Assembly (NCBI GenBank): GCA_964199315.1
Contig: OZ116709.1
Span: forward strand, 26,598,001 to 26,662,000
Length of the DNA: 64,000 bases
Direction: 5' to 3'
Origin: Orbicella franksi
Taxonomy: Eukaryota
In this document: positions 32,101 through 46,113 of the stretch, piece by piece
Position numbering within the stretch: the first letter of the stretch is position 1
Layout of the letters: every line of letters begins with the position of its first letter
Translations under genes and position numbers: made by a program
Notes under the pieces: generated by a model
Told to the model about the DNA's origin: nothing
The model's database searches: none
The model's input: the letters and a program-made list of their open reading frames with translations, nothing else

Positions 32101-34329
32101 CATGCCTTATGAAGACAGCGATTCGGATTGCATTCATGAAGTTCATGCCATTTTTTTTTTCACAAACTATTTGGCGATATGGAAATTCGCAGTTTGTTGG
32201 CAGCTGTTGTTATGTTTAGTTATCACATTGCCCCGAAGGCATAAGATAAGCGATTTAGTGCTCTTGTAATAAATAAATGTTAGTTCGTTGTTTCAAACTG
32301 TGCACCCTATTTTCAATTCCGAAGGGGCAAAACAAAAACGGTTCTACGATTTCAAAATAAAAATAGTCTGCAACAAGACTTCCTAACAACAGAGTTTTTT
32401 CATTTCCATATTTATTTAGTTTCGTTTAGTGATAGTATTGGCCATTATAGACACGAAAGATAGATTTTCGAATTCTTTTCTCCTTGCTGAATCGCGAGGT
32501 TGTTTTATTTTTTGGTTAACGAACGTTAATAGGAGCGATTTGCAATCTGAAGGGAAACGTAGACAAAGCATTCTTATCTCGAGTCTCCAGCGATAGGACT
32601 TTTGTGATCATGGTTTTTGATTACGATTGTTTGTTCAAAGGTTTTTGCCATCATTAAACTTTAATATGTGCACCAGAATTTACAGCTTAAAAGTTGGTTC
32701 TTATTGAAGTTGGGAGTTCAAGCTACAGGATATTTACCTTGCAAAGTAATTTCGATTAAAAAATGTCTTCCAAATTAGCTGAAAAGCGTCGAATTGAGAT
32801 AATTGTAATGAAAAAAACCCATCTGGTGCTCGCTTTCTCGAAGTAATTTATGGCTGTTTGCGGAGGTGTATAGCTAGTATACATTTAGTGTTTGCCAATT
32901 GAAATCTTTCGCGGAGAATTTCCCTTTCGGTTCGGTTTTGATCTCCACAGTGCGTCGTGATGTTTATGTGGAAAAAGGCAATTTTCTTTAAGGATGTAAT
33001 GATACAGCCAGCACTTGGGTAAAAGGTTAAGCAATTTTACGTTATAATGTACTCCGTAATTCTTTAACACCGCCCACTCTCAATCTATAACTCCATTATT
33101 TTTTCGATATTAACACTTGCTTCAGTTTCGCTCGGCTCATCATAGGAGCAAAAAAAACTAATTAGTAACCTTTCGATTCCGTATTACCATTAAAATCTAC
33201 ATACACCTAAGGACTTTCTGCGCGACGTTTTCGGTATTATATTGCTCGAGGCTCGAGTTATGTGTTTTAGAAAGTGTTTTCAGTTTTGAAACAAAAAAAA
33301 GGACGAATTTGCTATTTCCGGGTCATCTTGAGCGTCGCAGGTGCATTAGTTGTTCTACAACAATAAAGAATTCCATTTCTTCGGCCGCTTTGGCAATGTG
33401 CAAACACAACTTGTACACGAGAAAGAAAAAAATTTGCATGATAATAGATTATCTGGAGCAAATGGGGCTAGCGTTCCAAACAATACGTTTTTCTCGTTTA
33501 AGTAATATTCTGGTTTTCGCCCTCTTAGATTCTTCGTGTTTTTGTGGATGGTTTGTTTTTATGGAAGTGCTGTAAATTGTATTGCGGTGGTGACTCCGAA
33601 TGAAGTTCTTAATGCGCTTAATGACGAGTTATTCTAAGACTGTTTTGACTTTCGATTAAAGTGTTTTAGTTTTTATACGTGTAAAACATTATCATATTTT
33701 TATGTTTTATACTTATATTTTTATCATATATTTTTTTGGTGAGCCCGGAATCTTTCTCCAAGACAGAACAATGCTTGGGAAACACGTTACAATACTTCTT
33801 GGATGAGAACGGTTTAAAGTTTAGAACTTCAACGAACGACGGTTTTTATTTGAAATTGTCAGACAAGTTGTGATTGCCTGTGTTCTCTTGTAAAAAATCT
33901 AAGTGTTGTTGAAATTCTGTCGCAGTGAACAATAGCTCATGTTAATTTAGTTTGCGTGGGAGGGAAAGACACGTCACTCAAGCGACAAGCGCGCGCATTA
34001 CCAATAAGCGAATATACAAATGGAATGAAGCTCTGTAGAAGCCATAAAACAGCCATCACCAAGCACTTCACTATATCGCTATTTCAAACAAGATGCTGAC
34101 ACGAATGCGCGTTTCTTGAGAGCAGGCGAAGCATCTGAAATCTTCTCGCTGAAGACTGATGGCAGAGAAATTTACTCTCGGTTGGCAGCGGAACTCCATG
34201 GCGCCAAGAAACGATGAGTAAAAAACTGTCAGACTGTCAGCGAAAAAGAGGAATTATCCAACCGGTCTTTGGCTGTGTTTTTCAGCCGGATAAACGAGGG
34301 ATTGCTTAAATAAGTGGCCTTTAGAGAAG

Positions 34330-37300
34330 ATGTCAAAGACCGGCAATCAAATCACATGGAAAGACCAGCTTATAGGCGCGATTGTGGTCATCTTATTTGT
34401 TATAACTCTAGTCTTAAACTTCTTGGCACTTCATTATACCTATGTCAAAGTTCGCAAGCCTTCGCTGAAGAAAATCCCGCATCTTTTGGTGGGCGCTCTG
34501 TCTTTGGCAGGGCTTGGAATTGCCTGTTTTCAGTATATACCATTCATCTCGTCTCGGTTCGCGGGTGAGTGGTCGCGCGACATTGGCGCGTGTCACTTCG
34601 TCGCGTTCGGCGTTCTGTTTTTCGGCACGTTAACCATCTCTCTGGTGGTAATGATGAGCTTAGAGCGACTTGGCGCAATCGTCTTTCCTTTCTACTACAA
34701 GGAGAGCGTCACTTTTCACAAGTGTGTGGTGTTGCTAGTCGTCTTGGTTCTGTACTCCTTTTTACTCGCCATTTTACCGACGGCGCTCAACAGAGTCGAG
34801 CTGAACGTCTCCACCGGCGTGTGCAGCTACGCGGTCGAGTCTCACAACACGGATACCAAGGCGGTGGTGTATGTGATGTCGACGCATTACGTGCTGTCAG
34901 TGCTAGTAATGGTGCTATCTAACATCACCGTGGTCTACACGCTGCATGTCTTGGAGAAAAAATCTCTCTCCGATGTTTATGATCAAGATAGCAGACCCGA
35001 GAAAGGGACACGCGCGAAAAGCTCTGGTACCTCTGCCTGCGTGAGTTTCGCCAAGATGGTGGCGCTGATGGCCGTTTGCTATTCAATTTGTTGGACTACA
35101 ATATTGGTAAGTGCTGACTATCTTTTAATTATCAGTGTATAGGCGAGTACGTCCATTGACCGGCGAATTTATGCGTAATTTGGTATTATTTTTTCGCGCG
35201 CCCGACCTCTGGATATCTTTGCTTTGTTTGTTTGCTAATGTTATTATAGATTCCATCTTGTTAATGTTATTGTAACTTTTCCGCGCGTGTACAAGTTTGG
35301 TTAGACTGTTTTCACCAACATGTTTCTTTCATTAACTTAGTGCCGGCTGTACAGACTTGATCAGTTTGGTTTTTGTCGGTTCAAGCTGCTTCGCTTTAAG
35401 TGACCGGAAATCCAAGCTCGGAAATCAGGAAAAAATAAACCTCTCTAGCCCGAAATTTCACCGAGTCCCTCGTGTTGTTGTCGTGGTTTGTTTAGGTAAT
35501 GTGTGGCATTAAGCTGGTTTATCGACCCAAGGAACAGAAAAACGCAAAAAAAAGTCGCTTAGAAATGAATACATCGGGGCGTATTGTTTAGAATATACTA
35601 ATCAGTATAAGAGACGAAGGGTAAGCTTTGAATTGATGTAGACATCAAAAACCTGCAATAAAAAGCATCACAACACTCAGGGTAAACCCGCGTTGGCCGA
35701 AAGAAGAGTTGTAAATATCTCTCGATTTGAATTTTCAGTCGTCTTCGCTAAACACTTCGTAAGCTATTAAACTAAAAGCGCGTCATTGTGTTTTTCTTCT
35801 TCAGACGCAGAGGCTAGTGGTAATTAAATCGAACTTTTTTCAGATCAGTGAAAATTAATATTTTCCAATGAAAATTATTATTTTCTGTCGGTCGTCTCGA
35901 AATTTCTCGGGAACAGCTGTAGCTTGTGGTAGAAATATTAACAGGGATCGGACCAGTCGTGAAACAAAAGCAAGCGCAGAGAATGAATGAATTTGTTTCC
36001 TCTGAAACCAATCCGTGAGGCAAACCAAGATAAAACAAAAATTGCATAATGATGTCCCCGAGGACTTGCTTATCTCGAGCTAAGTGATCGACCATCGCAT
36101 CAACCCGATTCAGCGTGCGTCAGTGTGTAATAGAAGCGAATTGAAGTCTGATTACAACGCTCTCAGCCGAACAGCGGCATCTTTCCATTATTCGGCGCAG
36201 AAATATCGGAATTATATTTCCTTATTACGGTTAATTTTTATCACCTTTCACCACTTACAGAATTTATGCCAACGAGAATTGATAAAAGAGCGGAGTCCAC
36301 ATGCACTTTGTCGTGCGGTTGGCTATATTACTTCCTCAAAAAAAAAGAAAAAAAAAATAGATGAAGCCAAGATTTCATTGACGAGTTTATCACCAGTGCT
36401 GTTCTTGGTTGGCTGGGAAATTGAATAAATTCTTTTCATATTCCTTCGATGACGCACTGTAATTGGCGACTAGCCTCAGTTGAGCACCGATAGGTTTTTT
36501 TTTTTTTTTTTTTTTTTTTCAGGGCTAGCTTTTAGTTGATACATGTAGTTGCGGGAATCTTAGTGCTAATAGGCATGATGTATTGAAGTCGCCCCAATAG
36601 CTAATGTATTCATCTTATCCTGCCACTCTTTTCGCGAAGCTCGTAGACTATCTTCTCCGACTGCATTTTAATAAAAATACCGACTCATTTGACCATTTAA
36701 TTGACGGTAAAAAATTGACGGTAGAAAACCCCATCAAACGTCAATACACAAAGATATACATTGATTTTCCCGCAGCCATTGAATGCTTTGAAACGTGTAA
36801 AAATTTGCATGCACCGTGAGTAAGTACGATGAACTTTCGATGAAAAGGGAAGCAGACGAAGCAAAAGACTGACGGCTTGTTGTTAATTTGTCCGTCGACA
36901 TAGTTGCAGGCAACGTTATGACATTTTTTCACTGCTGTTTTCCCATTTTATTGAGCAAGACATTAAAATATAGCGGTGAAACTAGACGAGTAATTGCTAG
37001 TCGCTTGTTGATACCAATAAATATTTTATAGCATTTCGCTAGCTCCCGCTATCTCGTTTAATTCGCGTGTAACTATGTGAATATTTGAACCAAGTTGACC
37101 CACTGTAGAGTAAGAGTTTAAAATTGACCGAAAGATCGAAAGTCTACAACCTTAGGCTGTATTTTTTGCTACTCGCACAGAAATTATGATTTTGTTTTTC
37201 CGTTGTTTTTCTCAATAATTAATTAAAGTTAATTGCCTAGTTTTGCTAAAATAACGGAACGGTTTTCAGTTGCGGTGAAAGTGAAAAAGCTAAGATGATT

Positions 37301-40300
37301 TTTTTATCTTTTTTCTGGCATCACATCCTGTATTTTAAAATGAACTGCCCGCGAGCAAATTTAAAATTGAAATAAATGACGCTTTTTTGAAACAGATACG
37401 ACCGTGTTTTCCTTTTCTTCTTTACATTGTTTTATTTCAACCCTCTAGAAAATTGCCGCCACAAATTCTTACAATGCAATATCCTTTTCTCACAGAAAAT
37501 CCTACATGCTAATATCCGCTAACAAATCACAATGTAATGGGTGCAAAAAAAAAAGGAAGGTAGAATAGCAAATGAAAGAACTTTACAATTTTTCTTTTGA
37601 GCGCTAACTTAGTTTCACCTTTACACCTGGTGGGTGGTTTTCGCACGAAAACGTGGCATTTCGCAGAATTGTGAAGTTCAGCGGGAAGCTTGGCGGGAAT
37701 CAAATACAACGCATTTTTTTTAAATGTTATTTTATGCAATCTGCGCAAACTTTTGTTGCTTAATGAAAATTTTTCATTCTCGATCTCATGAAGCCTCACT
37801 ATTTTCAGGCAAAAGAAAATTGTAGGGAAATAAATTAAACCTTATTCATCACAAATTTAAGTGCGAGTTCGCTGTTTATCGTGTTAATGAGAGGACTTTG
37901 TGCTGTTTTGTCTTTAAGTAAATATTATTGACATGCTTTTCGTTTAATATAAACACAACACAGCTAAAACGAAACTTGAAATATACATTTGTAACTCAAT
38001 TTTCTCTTTTTTAATGACATATGGGAAGTTTTTCATTTTAAAAGGAGACATTTCTCATCAAGATTACATGGCGGATTTGGCCATTTTTACGGATATAAGA
38101 GATCAAAGTTCTGTGAAAACTAAACCACATCCCATGGATTAATTGCATTCCCCCAAAGTCGCTCAAATCTCCAAGACGAAACATGGAGTTGTTTGTTCAT
38201 CCGTTAACCCAAAGCCCAGTCTAAATAAAAATTACAGGAAGAAACGTTCTAGCTTGTACAGCACAATCCACGACTGGATTCCTTATTTTTGCAGAATACG
38301 AGTCCTCCTGTTTGCCCCCCACCCCCTCCCCCTCGACCTGTACTCCTACCAGGGGCGGATCTCCAATGGGCGCAAAAGTAGTCGAGACACTGTTAGAAAA
38401 TGACGCTTTTCGATACTTAACCTCTTATTCCATTTAATTTGCGGGCCCCCCAATTCAATGTTGTGTGGTGCTGTGGTCTGTGCAGTCTAAGAACTAGAGA
38501 AATCAACGCTGTTTGGGGCAAGGGGGAGGGGGGAGGGGGGCGAATGTTTCCAAGACGCTCGAAAATCGAATTTCACTGTGAACTGTCTCAACACTTTTGT
38601 CGCGTACTGTAGGATAAATGGTGACTGATTTCATAAAATAATCCCCGAAGGCGCAATCTTCTTGGCTCAGGGGTCCTGTGCCATGATCCCCCAGGGAGTG
38701 TATTGGATTTTAACTCCCTCAAGTCCTCTTTCCGGGATGTTAAACCGATTTCCGTAAAACGGTGAAAACTTATATGGATCCGCGCCTGACTAAGGTTTTA
38801 CGGCGATTAATTCGTTTGCAAGTGGAGAGCTTAGATGAAAGTGTCAAATTTTGGGCCTTTGTCATTTGTTGTCAGATCATTTCCAAAGGTGGTCTGTTTT
38901 TGTTTGTTTGTTTGTTTTTTATTACGGTTATATCCCCCTCCCGATATAAGCTCTCCCTGTTATATACTGTTTAGTTCCTTCCCCCCCAGGAGGTGGAAAG
39001 GGCCCCGTTATATATATGCTCTCCTAAAATCCTTAGGAACTTGTGTAAGCCCAGGGCTTAGATATATAAAGGCAGTTAAGTAATGTCATCTTTCGTTCGT
39101 TTATGAGACTAGTTCACGCGCATACTCAACGGATGGGAACCGCTATTAACCTGACTGCGAGAAAAAGTAACAGAACATCCTCAAACGCCTTAGGCAAACA
39201 TGACATTGCTATTAACTTTTTATTATCTGATAATCTAATCTCGTTCAGGCCTGAATTTTTTTCAGGCTCTAATTTCACAACTGCCTTAGTTGTGTTTATA
39301 ACTGCGATGATCAATCATGTCGTCATATCTTTCTCCGGAGTTCAAATATATTATCTTTCATATATTCACTTGTATTCTTCACAATCTACGGGTATATAAC
39401 GAACTCACAATATAATCAGCTCCCAGTTGGCTTGATAACTCAGTTGCTGGAGCACTGCAACGGAATCGCAGAGGTCATGGGTTCGAATCCCGTTCAGGCC
39501 TGAATCTCACAACTGCCTAAGTTGTGTATATAACTGCGATGATCAATCATGTCTTCATATCTTTCTCCGCAGTTCAAATATATGATGTTTCATATATTCA
39601 CTTGCAAGCACGCATAGTCTTATAGCCATTTCAAAAAAAAAAAAAAAGTTCAACTTTGGAACTAACAAATTTCAAATCATGTCCGCCTCCTTCACGACTA
39701 CCAAAAATCAAATTGCGAGATATTGAACTGAGCAACTGAAACGAATAATTCATGAAAATTATGGCTGTCATTTGAAAAATCACACTCTGTGATCTCTTTC
39801 ACGGAATTACAAGTTTAAACAACTTTTACAGACTAATGAACAGTACACATGCATGTACTGGTTAAGAACTTTCATTTGGACTGTAGTACATGAGGATTTC
39901 ATCCACAAAATTTGAAACGTTAAAACCACATAGGCTCAGTAACGAAGACGAGGCTTCAAATCAGTGTATTCTAGTGAGATCGCTGGTAACAACAATGCAA
40001 GTCTTTTTTTGTTTGTTTGTTTTTTGTTTTTGCTTTTTTGTGTTTTGTTTTGTTTTGTTTTGTTTTTTGGTGTGACATGGGACGCATAAGGTAAATAGAG
40101 AGGGTTACGTACTCCTGAAAACCAGGGACACGGGCATATAGCAGAATAAATTGTGTGGGCAGAAAACCTGCATTTTCAAAAGTTCAACGCAAGACTTGTT
40201 TTTTGGATTTAGGATGAAGATCAAAAAATTCTCCCCAATAAAAGATGTCACGATCTCCATGAACAAGATTTTGCTCTTTGAAGTGTCGGTATGACCAGCA

Positions 40301-43300
40301 GAGTCTCATTTTATAGCTCGTAGAGTTACTGTAACCACTTTGAATTCAGCGTAAGACAATACAGAAAAGGCATCGTAACTGAAGGGCTCCAGTAAAACGT
40401 ACGTGGGGATTGAAGGATAAAATAATTCTCAGAAAGCTTCACTCCGTTAGAGCCTACCCTTTTCTAACCACACGTATATAAATAAGCTATAAGGTGTGTT
40501 AGAACAGATCAAATCGCTTCTGTGTACTTTCAGAAATGACATTGTACACAAATTACACCATCAGGATTACATCAGTGTTTCTTACCATGTTTTCCTTCAC
40601 TTTCAACATGGCGCAGTTTCAAGACCAGCGCGAACGGTTTATTTAATAACCCTTTTATTTCTTGCCATATTTTCCTCCACTTTCAACATGGCGCGATTTC
40701 AAGTCCCATCCCCGAACGGGTTCTACGAACGTAACACGGACATAACTGGCAGACGTTCTTAAATAATCTTTTTATTGTTAAATTTCAGATGCGAATCGTT
40801 ATCCTATACGCTTATAACTGGCATAACAAGTACTTCGACCAAGTGGTGCTGGTGCTGACCACGTTGGATCCTCTTATAAATCACTGCGTCTGTCTATGGA
40901 CTATGAGAAAATACCGCGATGGCTACGCATCCTCGCTGGGCAAGGTCTTCTCTTGCTTCAAGCCTTCGGAGGAAGGGATGTTTCGTTCCGCCATCACTCG
41001 GATCAGCTCTATATCCAGGCGTTCTTTTAGTCGCTCGTCTTCTTCGGCTAGGTCATCCTCCATGCGAACATCAAGAAGAAAATCTTGTAAGTTTGGAGTT
41101 GCACTTTTTTAGATATAAAGGAAAATTATTTTTAGCTCAAATTGTCGGCCATTTCCTCGTCCTGTATTCATGGCTTTGGGTTACTGATAAAGAGCGGCGA
41201 GACTACCGCGCGATATTCATTAATTATATCATTTCTTGCAAGGAGACAAGTCTCGTTCATCTCGTACGAAGCCTTAAAATCTTAGTGCACTAAGATAGAT
41301 AATCACCAAAGGAATTACAGTGATCCATAGAGGACTAAAGATGGATCAGAGGGGGAAGATTGTTACGAAATTTACGAAAGAACTGTTCTTTTTTTTTTTT
41401 TCCGTGCTAATCTTTGCCGGCAGAAGGGCTGAGGAAGAGACAAAATTGAATTATTTTATAGATTAATGGAAGGAGTTCGTTGTCATGTGTAAAATGCTGC
41501 CAAAAGAAAAAAAAAAGCTTATCGAGCTGTTGAAAAATTAGAGTAATTTACAATTTCAGTGGTTTTAAAACCACGATAGTTCCGCGCAATGACGAGAAGA
41601 TCGATCACTTTTCCGAAAAACGTTCCGGTCGGTCATTTTCAATTGAAGATTGTAGTGTATGGTTTTCTGGGCGGCTGGTTTCCCAAGATGATATAGTGTT
41701 TGCTATTTTAGCCGGAATAAACGTTCTTAAATCCATTGTCAAACCAGCAAATGTGCCATTTAGTAAGCACTTTATTTCTGTTTTGTATTAAAATGAAGTT
41801 AATTTATATACGCCCAGATTCGATGTCTCTTTACAGCTCTGCTGCATTTTTCATGAAAAAAGTTAAATTCTGCCGGGCCTAAAATTCAGTTTTTCTTTGT
41901 CCTTTAAAAACGGTCGTTTTTATGCCGGTTCGTTTTCAACTCTGGGTCGCGAAAAACATTTTTCCTTCCTCCTCAAATATATTTTTTCCACCCCCTCAAA
42001 TTCGATATTCAGAGAGGCCATCAACCATTCAATAAGATCCGTGATGGCCCCTTACCTGTTTTTTTTTTTTTTTCCTTCTTATTTTCTGATTCTGGCATCC
42101 AAAAATCATTTGCCGTTTAAAGAAAGCAGTAAACGCCAGTCCCTGAGTGCTCAAAAACTCTGTGTTTTGCGACGTGGAAAAGTTTTCGCAAAGATTTTAT
42201 TGCGTGGTGAGTGTTGGAAAAGAAGCAAACATTTGTCATTAACAGCCATAAAACCCGTGTCCATGAGATGCGTGGTAAGACGAGAAACACGAAATCTTTT
42301 TCCTTATTATACATAGTGACGTCCGTTTTATTTTTTATATTATACACGGTTTATTCAACGTTAAGTGTTTCTATATCATTCGAGTGCAAAGGAGATCTCT
42401 TATCAACTTATGATAAAATGAACGTCGATTCGTTTTAAGTTTTCACCAAAATAAATATTAACTAAGGTTAACAGATTGCAGTCAACGTCAGCGTTTCACG
42501 AGACCATATCCCGCGCCAAACAGTCGAGTGGCATAATAAGCGCCGCTCCACGCTGTGTGGAACCAAAATTAAAATTTTCTTGCTCAGTCAGTCATGCATG
42601 ATTCGTTAATTGTCTCCTTGCGTGTGGCTAAATCGACTAAGTATTGATAATCACTATATTTCACCTGTTACCCTTCCCTGGACTTTAAGGTCAATAAATC
42701 GTGTATCAGCCCGCCGAGTGATTTATTACTACGCTATCAAGCACGGTTGTTTTGAATGTTCAATAAGTTCTCAGGTTCCCACGTCTGATTTCGGCATTTC
42801 TTTTTTTCTTACAGTGCATTCACCATTCATAGAAAACGTCTCGGCAAAGTACTTCCAATCATTAATTTTGAAACTGCAAAATGCGACACCTTGTTGATGT
42901 TACAACATGCTGAGTTTAAAGGACAGTTCTACCACTCAATTACCAAGTCGCCATAGATTACTTAGCTTTTATTAATACAAATTTCTGACTCGTTTTTATT
43001 CCGTGCAAGCGCGCTTCGTGAGTTTTTTTCTCCATCGATCGAATATTTATCTTTCAGTGGTTAGTTAATCCAAAGATTTAGTAGTAGATAATAACTCTTT
43101 CTCCAGTTGAAGTTCGTTCTTTGATAATTTTTACCCTCGTCTGTTTTGATCCCGCTCCCATTACTGTTTTCGTGCATTTCTCATATTTGTAGTTAAGGAA
43201 ATTTTCCATGTTGATCGGTTTTCGTGTTTTCGTGATCGAATTGAGTACGTAGTTATTTTAAGTTGTTGTTCAAAGCGAAGTACGTATATTTTGAAATATA

Positions 43301-44202
43301 ATCACGTCATATGGAGCTTTCGTGGTTTGTGATCGCGTTGTTTCCATGATTGTCATAAATATTTAACTGCAAAGCTTATGTTGCACGCTACTGGTTTTAA
43401 CTGTTTCTATCAAAGAAAACCTGATCAGTAAGTACTTTCAGTCGCCTATTTCTTATATCCTTCAAAATGCGAAACTATTGGCCGAATTTTCCTGATAATG
43501 CTTCGGTAAACTTTTTCGGAAAAGTCTTCCCAGAAACGTGATCACCAATCACCTGCCATTAATACTTCGTCCATTTTCTTCAACTGTTAATAACTGAAAG
43601 ATACTAGGTTATGGATCCACTACAAATCAGAGCCGGGTTGTTCAAAGCCTGATTATGCTAACCCAGGATTAGCGAGAATTTTGATTGCAGTTTTGCAATT
43701 TTCGGTGGGGTTTTCTGTTTAAATATTGTTTGTCTTCCAGTGTTGAGCGTGATTTATCTCAAAATACACAAAACATAAGAAGTAGAATATAATTTATTCA
43801 AGAAAAATTTATGCTTCGGTTAAATTTTAATCCTAGGTTAGCGTTAACCGACTTTCATACAACCCGGCCCTGGTATTTTTAATTTGTTTGAAGCCCAGAT
43901 CCCACTCTGTGTGAAGTAAAAGAACTCGTACCCAGATTGCACTCTGAGTGTAATGTATAATAATGGTCTGGGCGGTAGAATGTTCAAATAACAGTAGATT
44001 ATCAGCTATAATCTCTGCTGAGGGGAATTCAATTAGTTTTAATTGTTTTATTTTTTTTTTCCTTTTAGCCGCCGCACATACGTACAAACAAGTGGCTCAG
44101 AATAACCCAGATGTGCCGAGACCCATGCCGGCACCAGTTCGTGCGGAGATCCAGTCCGACCCCAAGGAGCTTGTAGAACAGGGCCACTCAGACGATCCTT
44201 AA
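34330..44202 (+). CDS. Class A 7TM GPCR, prostanoid-receptor-like, atypical. Exons 34330-35106, 40789-41086 and 44069-44202 give 402 aa; the unspliced form ending at 41112 gives 366 aa
   Basis: Six TM helices in ORF 34330 (N1.50 in VLNFLAL, C3.25, MSLERLGAIVFPFYY, ECL2 Cys). A phase-0 intron follows CWTTIL (ttg|gtaagt ... tttcag|atg), at the TM6 position typical of prostanoid receptor genes. Exon 2 supplies TM7 and a Ser/Arg tail. A phase-1 donor tctt|gtaagt is compatible with the 44069 exon. Confidence 0.85.
39241..39605 (+). mobile_element. tRNA-related tandem SINE-like repeat (about 1.7 units) in GPCR intron 1
   Basis: Duplicated tcacaactgcct...ataactgcgatgatcaatcatgtc...tatattcacttg, flanking a tRNA-like segment (ataactcagttgctggagcac...gggttcgaatccc). 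Confidence 0.65.
43628..43872. mobile_element. MITE with TIR cag(g/a)gccgggttg
   Basis: cagagccgggttgttcaaagc...gactttcatacaacccggccctg. Confidence 0.7.
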
Positions 44203-46113
44203 CGATGGCCGGCCCATCATGCTAGAGGTGCTACAATGGTAATAGTGACCTTCCTCAGGACCACGGGGACTACTCCGATATTTACAACGAAGTTCAGACG
44301 ATCGAGGCGCCAGGAATCAGATTAAGAATGTCTATATCACCAAGCTTCATTTGATTACGACCTTGCAATTTTCATCAGTTGATGTACTTGCCCATATATT
44401 TAAAATGTAGAATGGAGTTGAGGTAAAATACTTATCCCAACTAAAAGCTGATTTGCCCAAAAACATCGAGGGAAGTTCTGCCAACCTTTCACGATGCGCT
44501 ACGGTATCCGTTAACATGTTAAAATTTCAAACACGAAAAAACAAATACTTAGAAACGTTTTGAGGGCGTATAATAGAAGGGGCCTCCCTAGAAAAAGCTA
44601 ACGCTCACAATACTTTTAAAGTTGTCCTCTCAGAACTATTCCAAACAAAAATGAAGGTGATATCGAACTTGACCATAGGCTGTTGTAATGTTTGGGGTGG
44701 TTTAATTTTCTCTCGACTGTGGTAAAACCAAAACCCAACAGAACATATTTGGACAATCACAACAACACGGGAAAAACACGATGAACCAATCAGACCTCAA
44801 AGAAAAAGCTTCCAACGGGTGCCAAGCGCGAGAAAAGAGCCATTAGTGCAGCGCGCGGGAAAACAGCCAACCGGTGCCAAGCGCGGGAGAGCTTTCAGCA
44901 GAACTGAATTTGATTCTGCTTCTGATTGGTTGAAAAAAAAAAAGCATTTCCTGATTGGTTACAGTCCGTTGCACGTCGGACATTTTTGGAACCAATCATT
45001 ATCGAGAACGTTAGAAATGCAATTTCTTTGGACACCTCGAAAATCACTGTAAGGCCTGTTTTAGTTACGTCTACTAATCCAACCCGTTAAGAATATCGGT
45101 CGCCCGTGTAGGATATCAAAATTCCAAGAATGACGTGGTATCGAGCAGTTGAAAACTGCGACAGGAAATCTAGAAAAGCACCTCATTATGTCATGATGGC
45201 ATATTTATTTAGTTATTTTTCAAATGTGTAAAACGAATAAAAAATAGTCTCACACTTTTCCGTCTTTTATGTTATCTATATTAGTTATGCAAAGCTTTTG
45301 ACTCGTATTTCATGGAATATCCGACGAGTCACTTGTAGTTCCTCAGTGTACACACAATCCTTTAGGCGAGTGTGTTGACCAGGTAAGTAACAAGTGTGAC
45401 ATTCCTTGGAATACCACGAGAAAGCGTTGCATTACTATTTTATACCATACCGTAGAAAATACGGTGATGGGACCGGCGCGCAGCGCACAATGGGAAAGCT
45501 GGGTGCCATACCGTGGAGTAATACAACGGCTTTCCTGTGTTGATTGGCTGTATTTTAAATGCAATGTATTAGGCTTGCAGTCTAGTAACCTTTTCTCTTA
45601 AGATCCAACGAGTGCTGAGCACGAGCGCAAAAACTCGTCCCGACCCCACACCGCGGTCTCGACCTTCGCCTCCTTTTGGGGGAATCTATCGTAGTTATGT
45701 TGGGCAAGCAAGGCAGGCCGGTCTGGATCCGCAATATTTTGTCCTTCCCAAGGGCCACCCCGTTGCATTCGGGCTTTTTTAAAATCCCCCGCGGATAACA
45801 ATTTTACTAACTGCAATCGACGAACTCAAGATAAAATAATGAGAGGATCTGTGAACAGACTAGATCCGCGACAAAAGCCAGTGAGACTATGACGGCTTCG
45901 TAGAGCAAGCGATTAGTTACCAGTAGCTGGATTCATAGAAACGCTAATCAAAAGCTATATTTAAATGAGTTGTCTACAACCAAGACTACACAGCGTTTGT
46001 GCCATGTCGACATTGCAATGACAAACTGCTGATCTCAACTTTGGTAGAGATTTATATTCTTTTTGTTTTTACATTAATATCCAGTCAAATAAGTTAATGT
46101 CGTTCCCAAAAAC

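What the first reader, a model, noticed from the sequence alone, without database searches (positions are those of the whole stretch)
34330..41086. Prostanoid-receptor-like GPCR that has lost the Na+ pocket, both helix-kink prolines, NPxxY and the prostaglandin-binding Arg
Seen, by manual alignment to the EP/FP receptor pattern: TM2 LSLAG (D2.50 to G), TM3 ERL, TM6 CWTT (P6.50 to T), TM7 DPLINHCVC (P7.50 to H, Y7.53 to C) and Val at the R7.40 position. The ORF is intact, with N1.50, the C3.25-ECL2 disulfide, the MSLERLGAIVFPFYY motif, the TM6 intron and a dense Ser/Arg tail. Established: R7.40 binds the prostanoid carboxylate, and D2.50/NPxxY are central to G-protein activation. Inference: an orphan receptor for a different (lipoxygenase-derived or neutral) lipid, or an arrestin-biased/scavenger-type atypical receptor in cnidarian oxylipin signalling.
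Basis: partly seen in the sequence, partly recalled or inferred. Interest (0 to 1): 0.7.

Follow-up and report, generated by a model that had tools for sequence, protein, structure and literature searches.

The report
Rewired prostanoid-like orphan receptor in corals
This stony-coral gene encodes an expressed, strongly conserved cell-surface receptor whose nearest relatives are prostaglandin receptors. It lacks several residues that such receptors normally need to bind prostaglandins and switch on G proteins, so it is an unstudied atypical receptor, not a decaying gene.

Summary
The gene is an intact class-A GPCR with G at 2.50, ERL, CWTT (T at 6.50), V at 7.40 and N-H-C-V-C in place of NPxxY. 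This numbering is supported by a 148-sequence alignment, an HMM alignment to squid rhodopsin, family-internal comparison and an AlphaFold2 model.

A third exon (44069-44202) completes a 402-aa protein.

The gene is not decaying. dN/dS is 0.04-0.09, spliced transcripts exist in related corals, 14 RNA runs hold exon 1, and the odd motifs are identical in Nematostella.

It belongs to a small family: the hexacoral orthogroup, a coral paralog and crinoid genes. The family groups with prostanoid-type receptors. Its position relative to the canonical prostanoid clade is unresolved, and grouping with the opsin-like hits is rejected.

Loss of D2.50, R7.40 and Y7.53 is ancestral to the family. Loss of P6.50 and P7.50 is specific to the hexacoral orthogroup.

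- An invariant Asp sits at 7.45, so the core acid may have moved rather than been lost.
- An invariant Arg sits at 2.65, so an acidic ligand is not excluded.

Ligand and signalling mode remain untested. I rate this a new variant of a known kind, of moderate interest.

The parts
34048..34329 (+). 5' UTR (minimum extent), contiguous with exon 1
   Evidence: Transcript contigs of a closely related coral (L013, L014; 95% nt identity) align from 34048/34162 without a break up to 35106.
34330..35106 (+). Coding exon 1: Met1 to Leu259, covering TM1 to TM6 up to position 6.52
   Evidence: ORF and gtaagt donor at 35107. Pfam 7tm_1 E 1.2e-18. Transcript block ends exactly at 35106.
34510..34512 (+). Codon of Gly61 at position 2.50 (normally Asp)
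   Evidence: Alignments. D in 130 of 142 aligned relatives; G in all five focal-orthogroup rows of that alignment.
34555..34557 (+). Codon of Arg76 at position 2.65 (Tyr in prostanoid receptors)
   Evidence: Invariant in 10 orthologs. Aligns with Y2.65 of the scallop EP4-like receptor. Y2.65 belongs to the carboxylate triad (PMC11057787).
34663..34671 (+). Codons of E112-R113-L114 (E/DRY position)
   Evidence: R3.50 is invariant.
35089..35100 (+). Codons of C254-W255-T256-T257 (CWxP with Thr at 6.50)
   Evidence: P in 126 of 143 relatives. T or A only in the focal orthogroup; the paralog and the crinoid keep P.
35107..40788 (+). Intron 1 (5682 nt, phase 0, after 6.52)
   Evidence: Same position in the coral paralog and in the coral GPCR5-like gene.
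40789..41086 (+). Coding exon 2: end of TM6, ECL3, TM7, helix 8, Ser/Arg tail
   Evidence: Acceptor tttcag and donor gtaagt at 41087. Transcript block 40789-41086.
40852..40854 (+). Codon of Val281 at 7.40 (Arg in prostanoid receptors)
   Evidence: R in 47 of about 100 relatives that include TM7.
40867..40872 (+). Codons of Asp286-Pro287 at 7.45-7.46
   Evidence: D at 7.45 occurs only in this family (7 of 148 rows; N in 63). Also present in the paralog. DSSP helix break at residue 285 in the model.
40879..40893 (+). Codons of N290-H291-C292-V293-C294 (NPxxY position)
   Evidence: Identical in Nematostella. NHVVC in a third hexacoral lineage.
40984..41086 (+). Ser/Arg-rich C-tail (residues 325-358)
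   Evidence: 25 Ser/Thr and 16 Arg/Lys in the 97-residue tail. Nine arrestin-type phosphorylation-code matches. Conserved to Nematostella.
41087..44068 (+). Intron 2 (2982 nt, phase 1)
44069..44202 (+). Coding part of exon 3, with TAA stop at 44200-44202.
   Evidence: tblastn with P0001, acceptor ttttag, spliced ORF of 402 aa, transcript block.
44203..45199 (+). 3' UTR (minimum extent)
   Evidence: L013 aligns on to 45199 at 77% identity.

Best explanation
Shown:
- The locus is a three-exon, expressed and strongly constrained gene for a 402-aa orphan class-A GPCR.
- It belongs to a small, old family: a hexacoral orthogroup (stony corals and sea anemones), a coral paralog on the same chromosome, and crinoid genes.
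- Among the nearest hits the family groups with the prostanoid-type receptors, at or near the base of the canonical prostanoid clade.
- The whole family lacks D2.50, R7.40 and Y7.53 and carries Asp-Pro at 7.45-7.46.
- The hexacoral orthogroup additionally replaced P6.50 (Thr/Ala) and P7.50 (His). It has kept these states since before stony corals and sea anemones split.

Inferred:
- It is a working receptor with a rewired core, not a classical prostanoid receptor.
- Its ligand cannot be held by the Y2.65-T(ECL2)-R7.40 triad. The invariant Arg at 2.65 leaves an acidic lipid possible.
- Three residues central to canonical G-protein activation (D2.50, P7.50, Y7.53) are absent, and a dense phosphorylatable tail is conserved.
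- From these two points, my preferred mechanism (about 45%) is ligand-dependent phosphorylation of the tail and arrestin-type output or internalisation, with weak or no canonical G-protein activation.
- Retained G-protein coupling through the relocated Asp7.45 and Pro7.46 is the main alternative (about 35%).
For: Gene model:
- Splice sites and an intact spliced ORF.
- Transcripts of relatives map as exactly three blocks.
- Full-length spliced mRNAs exist in four related corals.
- Exon 1 is held by 14 RNA runs, drawn from six of the eight studies that hold it.

Constraint:
- Pairwise dN/dS is 0.04-0.09 where dS is unsaturated, and the tail is constrained too.
- The motifs are invariant across corals, Nematostella and a third lineage.

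Family and placement:
- A profile search of 1.84 billion proteins found only three orthogroup clusters, then the coral paralog and the crinoid at E 1e-32, then a continuum from 4e-18.
- That continuum is dominated by receptors with R7.40 and NQxxDPxxY.
- Named neighbours are EP4-like and IP-like receptors and Tripedalia GPCR5.
- In the careful ML tree the family has 100/99 support, the side shared with all R7.40 receptors 100/99, and the canonical clade that excludes the family 97/92.
- Union with the opsin-like clade is rejected, p-AU 0.0026.
- The top ESM Atlas feature clusters are EP2 and IP.

Structure: 7TM model with pLDDT 81 and pTM 0.78.

Role of the triad: PMC11057787.

Tail: nine phosphorylation-code matches, against three in a scallop EP4-like tail.
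Against: - No functional datum exists. The Nematostella ortholog was in the sequence collection of the large deorphanisation screen, but not among the 161 receptors tested.
- The position relative to the canonical prostanoid clade is unresolved. Nesting inside it is not rejected (p-AU 0.12).
- The comparison set was chosen by similarity to the query, so the tree has no independent root.
- PDB sequence and fold searches do not discriminate: squid rhodopsin, EP4, CB1 and V2R all score alike.
- R3.50, W6.48 and an aromatic at 8.50 are retained and constrained. Prostanoid receptors themselves activate unconventionally. G-protein coupling may therefore survive.
- Ser/Thr-rich tails are also common in ordinary G-protein-coupled receptors.
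Confidence: 0.6

Rival explanations
1. It is a fully G-protein-coupled receptor for an acidic oxylipin, with the key residues relocated rather than lost. Asp7.45 replaces Asp2.50 in the sodium/activation core, Pro7.46 supplies the TM7 kink, and Arg2.65 replaces Arg7.40 as the carboxylate anchor.
For: - D7.45 is invariant in all three family branches and found nowhere else among 148 relatives.
- P7.46 is kept, and the model shows a helix break at residue 285.
- R76 at 2.65 is invariant in the orthogroup. 2.65 is a carboxylate-contact position.
- R3.50, W6.48 and the aromatic at 8.50 are retained.
- EP2 activates without W6.48 or the PIF motif.
Against:
- R2.65 is absent from the paralog and the crinoid.
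- Y7.53 is missing throughout the family.
- D7.45 and the loss of D2.50 amount to one evolutionary event, so their co-occurrence is not statistical evidence.
Confidence: 0.3
2. It is an ordinary prostanoid (PGE2/PGI2-type) receptor, as EP-type database names on related proteins might suggest.
For: Shared TM3 motif, ECL1 Trp, ECL2 hairpin with disulfide, TM5 (C/S)N, Arg after TM6, Asp at the top of TM7, and the shared intron position after 6.52 in other coral genes of the group. EP2/IP are the top ESM clusters.
Against: - The triad Y2.65-T(ECL2)-R7.40 reads R-G-V.
- L/F7.36 is Gln, and DPxxY reads NHCVC.
- The family is placed outside the canonical clade.
Confidence: 0.04
3. It is a vasopressin/oxytocin-type peptide receptor or a Gq-coupled opsin, as the automatic names say ('cephalotocin receptor 2' in Acropora, 'rhodopsin, GQ-coupled' in Nematostella).
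For: With a single sequence, V2R is the best PDB hit (9e-10). Squid rhodopsin is the best profile and Foldseek hit. The TM2 motif FQYIP resembles FQVLPQ.
Against: - FQxxP occurs only in the stony-coral orthologs, not in Nematostella or the other lineages. V2R drops to 1e-6 with the family profile.
- There is no Lys at 7.43 (Thr284).
- Union with the opsin-like clade is rejected, p-AU 0.0026.
- The Nematostella ortholog is absent from the neuropeptide-GPCR tree files of Thiel et al. 2024.
Confidence: 0.04
4. It is a decaying or non-functional gene copy.
For: Several hallmark motifs are lost.
Against: The ORF is intact across three exons. dN/dS is 0.04-0.09. The motifs are identical from stony corals to sea anemones. 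Spliced mRNAs exist and RNA runs hold the exon.
Confidence: 0.01

Closest known systems
Prostanoid receptors (EP2/EP4/IP type, class A GPCR)
   Same: - They are the best hits outside the family in the large protein search, and the family shares their side of the tree.
- Shared motifs: TM3 M-S/A-x-E-R-x-x-A-I-x-x-P-F/Y-x-Y; Trp in ECL1; ECL2 hairpin with disulfide; (C/S)N in TM5; Arg just after TM6; Asp at the top of TM7; Pro at 7.46 as in EP4/IP types.
- The intron after 6.52 is shared with two other coral genes of this receptor group. That vertebrate prostanoid receptor genes have it there too is from my memory of the literature, not verified here.
- Short N-terminus.
   Different: - No D2.50.
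- The carboxylate triad Y2.65-T(ECL2)-R7.40 reads R-G-V, and Gln sits at 7.36.
- N7.45/D7.49 is inverted to D7.45/N7.49.
- P7.50 is His, Y7.53 is Cys and P6.50 is Thr.
- The family is placed outside the canonical clade (97/92), though nesting is not rejected.
Tripedalia cystophora GPCR5 and its coral ortholog (cnidarian prostanoid-type receptors)
   Same: Cnidarian, the same supergroup and the same intron position. The window's genome carries an ortholog at C12:5.26 Mb.
   Different: GPCR5-type genes keep D2.50, DRx, WxP and DPxxY. Tripedalia keeps R7.40, whereas the coral copy has Ser there. They lie inside the canonical clade.
Atypical, arrestin-biased receptors such as ACKR3/ACKR4
   Same: A working analogy only: 7TM receptors that lack productive G-protein coupling and depend on tail phosphorylation (abstracts listed).
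   Different: There is no homology beyond class A. As far as I recall, ACKRs mostly alter the DRY region and keep D2.50 and NPxxY. Nothing about G-protein or arrestin use was measured here.
Type I GnRH receptor (N2.50/D7.49 reciprocal swap; from my own knowledge, not tested here)
   Same: A precedent for a class-A receptor that works with the TM2 Asp moved to TM7.
   Different: There the acid sits at 7.49, and the receptor keeps P7.50, Y7.53 and P6.50. Here the acid sits at 7.45.

Membership tests
Class A (rhodopsin-like) GPCR | 7tm_1 profile match and seven-helix fold | tested here: met
   Pfam PF00001 E 1.2e-18 on exon 1. AlphaFold2 7TM plus helix 8, pLDDT 81. Foldseek probability 1.0 to many class-A structures.
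Class A (rhodopsin-like) GPCR | N1.50, C3.25-ECL2 disulfide pair, R3.50, W6.48 | tested here: met
   N30, C88/C165, R113 and W255.
Class A (rhodopsin-like) GPCR | D2.50, P6.50, NPxxY (consensus microswitches) | tested here: not met
   G61, T257 and N-H-C-V-C. These are consensus features, not strict requirements for membership.
Prostanoid receptors | Carboxylate recognition triad Y2.65 - T(ECL2) - R7.40 (PMC11057787) | tested here: not met
   R76, G163 (with T162 adjacent) and V281.
Prostanoid receptors | Hydrophobic M/L3.32 and L/F7.36 along the alpha chain | tested here: not met
   V95 (Ile in Nematostella) is hydrophobic, but 7.36 is the invariant Gln277.
Prostanoid receptors | TM7 N7.45-(Q/S/P)7.46-x-x-D7.49-P7.50-x-x-Y7.53 | tested here: not met
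   D-P-L-I-N-H-C-V-C. Only P7.46 matches.
Prostanoid receptors | Falls inside the clade of named prostanoid receptors | tested here: inconclusive
   The ML tree places the family outside the 48-row canonical clade (97/92) but on the same side of a 100/99 split. Forcing it inside costs 8.6 lnL, p-AU 0.12. The comparison set was chosen by similarity, and the tree is unrooted.
Prostanoid receptors | Conserved intron at the end of TM6 | tested here: met
   Phase-0 intron after 6.52 in this gene, its paralog and the coral GPCR5-like gene. The vertebrate condition is from memory; a literature search found no open paper on it.
Prostanoid receptors | Binds and is activated by a prostanoid | not testable with these tools
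   Needs binding and signalling assays.
Opsins | Retinal-binding Lys at 7.43 | tested here: not met
   Thr284 aligns with the squid rhodopsin Lys. Clade union is rejected, p-AU 0.0026.
Vasopressin/oxytocin-type receptors | Family-wide TM2 FQVLPQ and TM7 NSCxNPWIY motifs, and membership of the neuropeptide-GPCR cluster | tested here: not met
   FQxxP occurs only in the stony-coral orthologs. TM7 has no NP. The Nematostella ortholog is absent from the neuropeptide-GPCR tree files.
Atypical/arrestin-biased 7TM receptors | No productive G-protein coupling; GRK/arrestin-dependent function | not testable with these tools
   Only indirect evidence: missing microswitches and a conserved phosphorylatable tail.

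The most novel reading that the evidence does not exclude
An ancient sister lineage of prostanoid receptors, present in hexacorals and crinoids, in which the activation core was rebuilt rather than broken. The core acid moved from TM2 (2.50) to TM7 (7.45), the TM7 kink is carried by Pro7.46, and in hexacorals the ligand-anchoring Arg moved from 7.40 to 2.65. The result would be a natural, half-billion-year-old alternative solution to class-A GPCR activation, and a dedicated receptor for a non-prostaglandin coral oxylipin.
Probability: 0.2. Interest if true: 0.65.

Novelty: new variant of a known kind. Interest (0 to 1): 0.45.

Why it matters
Corals and sea anemones make many oxylipins, and oxylipin signalling is being linked to symbiosis and bleaching. 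So far the receptors are inferred mainly from antibody staining for 'EP2/EP4' (PMC13033444).

This gene marks a conserved, expressed receptor close to that group which cannot work like a textbook prostaglandin receptor. Automatic annotation mislabels it as an opsin or a cephalotocin receptor.

For GPCR mechanics it is a natural case of a receptor kept under strong selection without D2.50, P6.50, P7.50 and Y7.53. That makes it a useful test of which microswitches are really indispensable.

It remains one orphan among hundreds in cnidarian genomes, so the interest is moderate until a ligand or a signalling output is found.

Tried and rejected
- The single-sequence phmmer alignment to V2R put CLWTM on NPWIY. 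I rejected it after the family profile, the 148-sequence alignment, the relatives' NPLVC/HPVTC and the model's helix limits all agreed on NHCVC.
- I first considered taking D286-P287 as D7.49-P7.50. I rejected that because it leaves only 31 residues between W6.48 and 7.49, and it contradicts.
- Foldseek against the PDB and Swiss-Prot models did not discriminate among class-A families.
- P0026 (Nematostella) had no encoding contig on record. P0023 had no DNA available. L026 was too short to hold exon 2.
- A search for further crinoid-type relatives found only a second crinoid.
- AU test B (family together with all 28 'other' rows) turned out to be compatible with the main split, so it is uninformative. 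Test C replaced it.
- A literature search for the TM6 intron of prostanoid receptor genes found nothing open.

Full report
**Gene model**

The + strand carries a three-exon gene.
- Exon 1 starts at the ATG at 34330 and ends at 35106, followed by the donor gtaagt.
- Exon 2 runs 40789-41086, between a tttcag acceptor and a gtaagt donor.
- Exon 3 supplies 44069-44202, with a TAA stop.
- The spliced ORF is 1209 nt, or 402 aa, without interruption.
- Transcript contigs from a coral about 95% identical at the DNA level align to the window as exactly three blocks: 34048-35106, 40789-41086 and 44069-45199. This fixes the splice sites and gives minimum UTRs.

**Check of the observation**

Exon 1 matches Pfam 7tm_1 at E 1.2e-18. 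Four independent lines fix the residue numbering.
- In a MAFFT alignment of the protein with 147 relatives, the columns read N at 1.50, G at 2.50 (D in 130 rows), C at 3.25, E-R-L, the ECL2 Cys, C-W at 6.47-6.48, T at 6.50 (P in 126), V at 7.40 (R in 47 of about 100 rows that reach TM7), D-P at 7.45-7.46, N-H at 7.49-7.50 and C at 7.53. A more careful L-INS-i alignment with named receptors gives the same result.
- A profile of five orthologs aligned by HMMER to squid rhodopsin puts N-H-C-V-C on N-P-M-I-Y, Thr284 on the retinal Lys, and Tyr301 on F8.50.
- The nearest relatives still have recognisable motifs at that place: NPLVC in a crinoid and HPVTC in the coral's own paralog.
- An AlphaFold2 model of P0001, which is 98% identical over residues 1-358 and identical at every position discussed, has pLDDT 81 and pTM 0.78. 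TM7 spans 273-297 with a DSSP break at 285, and helix 8 spans 299-315. This fits C294 as 7.53.

An earlier phmmer alignment to V2R shifted TM7 by four residues. I rejected it.

The motif MSLERLGAIVFPFYY, the disulfide pair and the Ser/Arg tail are all present.

**Not decay**
- Pairwise dN/dS between the window's coding sequence and four coral mRNAs is 0.04-0.09 wherever dS is not saturated. For example, ω is 0.069-0.086 on the 7TM core at dS about 0.12-0.14, and 0.047-0.063 at dS about 0.7-0.9. The tail is constrained too, at 0.05-0.3.
- G2.50, ERL, CWT(T/A), V7.40 and DPLINHCVCLW are identical in stony corals and Nematostella. A third, unnamed hexacoral lineage reads DPLINHVVC.
- Full-length spliced mRNAs were recovered from four related corals.
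- Contigs of 14 RNA runs, drawn from six of the eight studies that hold the stretch, contain all of exon 1.

**Relatives**

A profile search of 1.84 billion representative proteins gave the following.
- Three clusters of the orthogroup, with E from 1e-132 to 1e-125.
- Two clusters at about 1e-32.
- A continuum starting at 4e-18.

The 1e-32 pair is a coral paralog and a crinoid protein.
- The paralog also lies in the window's genome, 2.4 Mb away on the same chromosome. It has the same phase-0 intron after 6.52.
- The crinoid protein is from Antedon mediterranea and is named 'neurotensin receptor type 1-like'. A second crinoid, Anneissia, also has one.

Almost half of the continuum rows that reach TM7 carry the prostanoid signature R7.40 ... 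N-Q-x-x-D-P-x-x-Y. The rows with a source name include the following.
- Scallop 'prostaglandin E2 receptor EP4 subtype-like'.
- Lamprey 'EP4 c'.
- Tunicate and amphioxus 'prostacyclin receptor-like'.
- Tripedalia GPCR5.

ESM Atlas feature search independently ranks the EP2 and prostacyclin-receptor clusters first, at 0.97.

**Phylogeny**

A careful ML tree (88 rows, LG+C20+F+G4 by PMSF, ultrafast bootstrap/SH-aLRT) gives these supports.

| Grouping | Support |
|---|---|
| The family (orthogroup, paralog, crinoid) | 100/99 |
| Split of 28 opsin-like and other rows from 60 rows (all R7.40 receptors plus the family) | 100/99 |
| 48-row canonical prostanoid clade, which excludes the family | 97/92 |

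- The family sits beside the canonical clade with a few other long branches, at 90/69.
- Forcing the family inside the canonical clade costs 8.6 log-likelihood units and is not rejected (p-AU 0.12).
- Joining it to the opsin-like clade costs 40 units and is rejected (p-AU 0.0026).

There are two caveats. The comparison set was chosen by similarity to the query, and the tree is unrooted. 'Nearest known kin are prostanoid-type receptors' is therefore supported, while 'member of the prostanoid clade' is not shown.

PDB sequence and fold searches do not discriminate among squid rhodopsin, EP4, V2R and CB1.

**The database names are misleading**
- 'Rhodopsin, GQ-coupled' fails on the missing Lys7.43 and on the AU test.
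- 'Cephalotocin receptor 2' probably arises from the TM2 string FQYIP, which resembles the FQVLPQ of vasopressin-type receptors. That string exists only in the stony-coral orthologs, and V2R falls from 9e-10 to 1e-6 once the family profile is used.
- The Nematostella ortholog appears as the truncated model NVEC200_005469_1.1 in the sequence collection of Thiel et al. 2024 (PMC11087051). It is absent from the uncut list of the 161 tested receptors and from the neuropeptide-GPCR tree files. It has never been assayed there.

**Order of events, from the family comparison**

| Position | Hexacoral orthogroup | Coral paralog | Crinoid |
|---|---|---|---|
| 2.50 | G | T | S |
| 7.40 | V | F | S |
| 7.53 | C | C | C |
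| 7.45-7.46 | D-P | D-P | D-P |
| 6.50 | T/A | P | P |
| 7.50 | H | P | P |

- The absence of D2.50, R7.40 and Y7.53 and the presence of D7.45-P7.46 are ancestral family traits. If the crinoid genes are true orthologs, these traits predate the cnidarian-bilaterian split.
- The loss of P6.50 and P7.50 occurred only in the hexacoral orthogroup, before stony corals and sea anemones diverged. The states have been frozen since.

The first concerns the core acid.
- Asp at 7.45 occurs in all family members and in none of the other rows, where N occurs in 63 and S in 13.
- Position 7.45 lines the sodium/activation core next to 2.50 (established structural knowledge).
- Relative to EP4/IP-type TM7 (N-P-x-x-D-P-x-x-Y), the family reads D-P-x-x-N-(P/H)-x-x-C. 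The Asp and Asn positions are swapped.
- The core acid may therefore have been moved rather than lost. Pro7.46 may supply the TM7 kink, in line with the helix break at residue 285 in the model.

The second concerns the ligand anchor.
- The carboxylate of prostanoids is held by Y2.65, a Thr of ECL2 and R7.40, flanked by M/L3.32 and L/F7.36 (PMC11057787).
- Here these positions read R76, G163 (with T162 next to it), V281, V95 and Q277.
- The canonical site is thus gone, but an Arg that is invariant in the orthogroup sits at one of its three positions.

Both ideas need coordinates or mutants. I could not measure side-chain geometry.

**Mechanism**

Shown: a constrained, expressed 7TM protein that retains R3.50, W6.48, the disulfide pair, an aromatic at 8.50 and a Cys after helix 8. 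It also has a tail of 25 Ser/Thr and 16 Arg/Lys in 97 residues. That tail holds nine matches to arrestin-type phosphorylation codes and two R-(R/K)-x-S/T sites, conserved to Nematostella.

Inferred:
- D2.50, P7.50 and Y7.53 are central to canonical G-protein activation (established knowledge).
- Because all three are absent and the tail is conserved, I lean at about 45% to a receptor whose main output is phosphorylation-dependent, meaning arrestin recruitment, internalisation or scavenging.
- A rewired but still G-protein-coupled receptor is the main rival, at about 35%. In its favour, R3.50 and W6.48 are constrained, and prostanoid receptors such as EP2 already activate unconventionally.

**Novelty and verdict**

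I found no paper on this family. Work on cnidarian oxylipin receptors relies on EP2/EP4 immunostaining.

The gene is a new variant of a known kind: a class-A, prostanoid-related orphan with an unusually depleted or rewired microswitch set held under strong selection. Interest is moderate.

Noticed in passing
L003 (G000:C12:24267127-24270861, minus strand); exon 1 at locus 1492-2367, exon 2 within locus 63-248: The closest paralog lies 2.4 Mb away on the same chromosome (31% identity). It has the same phase-0 intron after 6.52. It reads T at 2.50, ERF, CWLP (P6.50 kept) and DPFVHPVTC (P7.50 kept; N7.49 is His, Y7.53 is Cys). A near-identical exon 1 exists in another coral (P0027).
   Followed up: partly
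L018 (G000:C12:5255028-5258783), exon 1 at 1465-2259; exon 2 at L024:3798-3962: This is the coral ortholog of Tripedalia GPCR5, a canonical-looking prostanoid-type receptor (D2.50, DRC, WIP, DPFMY). It has Ser instead of Arg at 7.40, so even this coral's most canonical copy lacks the carboxylate Arg.
   Followed up: partly
L004 (G000:C15:12072185-12075982) and proteins P0030, P0032, P0098, P0112: Another cnidarian clade of prostanoid-type receptors has Leu at 6.50 (CWSL/CWGL) while keeping D2.50 and DRL. Loss of the TM6 proline has therefore happened more than once in this receptor group.
   Followed up: no
window 41087-41112: If the exon 2 donor is not used, the frame runs on for eight codons (…CKFGVALF) to a stop. 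That would give a short isoform ending just after the Ser/Arg tail. The Nematostella 'isoform X2' also ends right after that tail.
   Followed up: no
I sent nothing from them to any search tool afterwards. They lie in the intron and do not bear on the finding.
   Followed up: no
G000:C8:7163076-7387638: A dense tandem array of at least 15 intronless class-A GPCR ORFs (about 25-29% identical to the query) turned up among the own-genome hits.
   Followed up: no
window 34528-34542 (F67-Q68-Y69-I70-P71): The TM2 string FQYIP mimics the vasopressin/oxytocin-receptor hallmark FQVLPQ, but it is present only in the stony-coral orthologs. This probably explains the 'cephalotocin receptor 2' label in Acropora.
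   Followed up: yes
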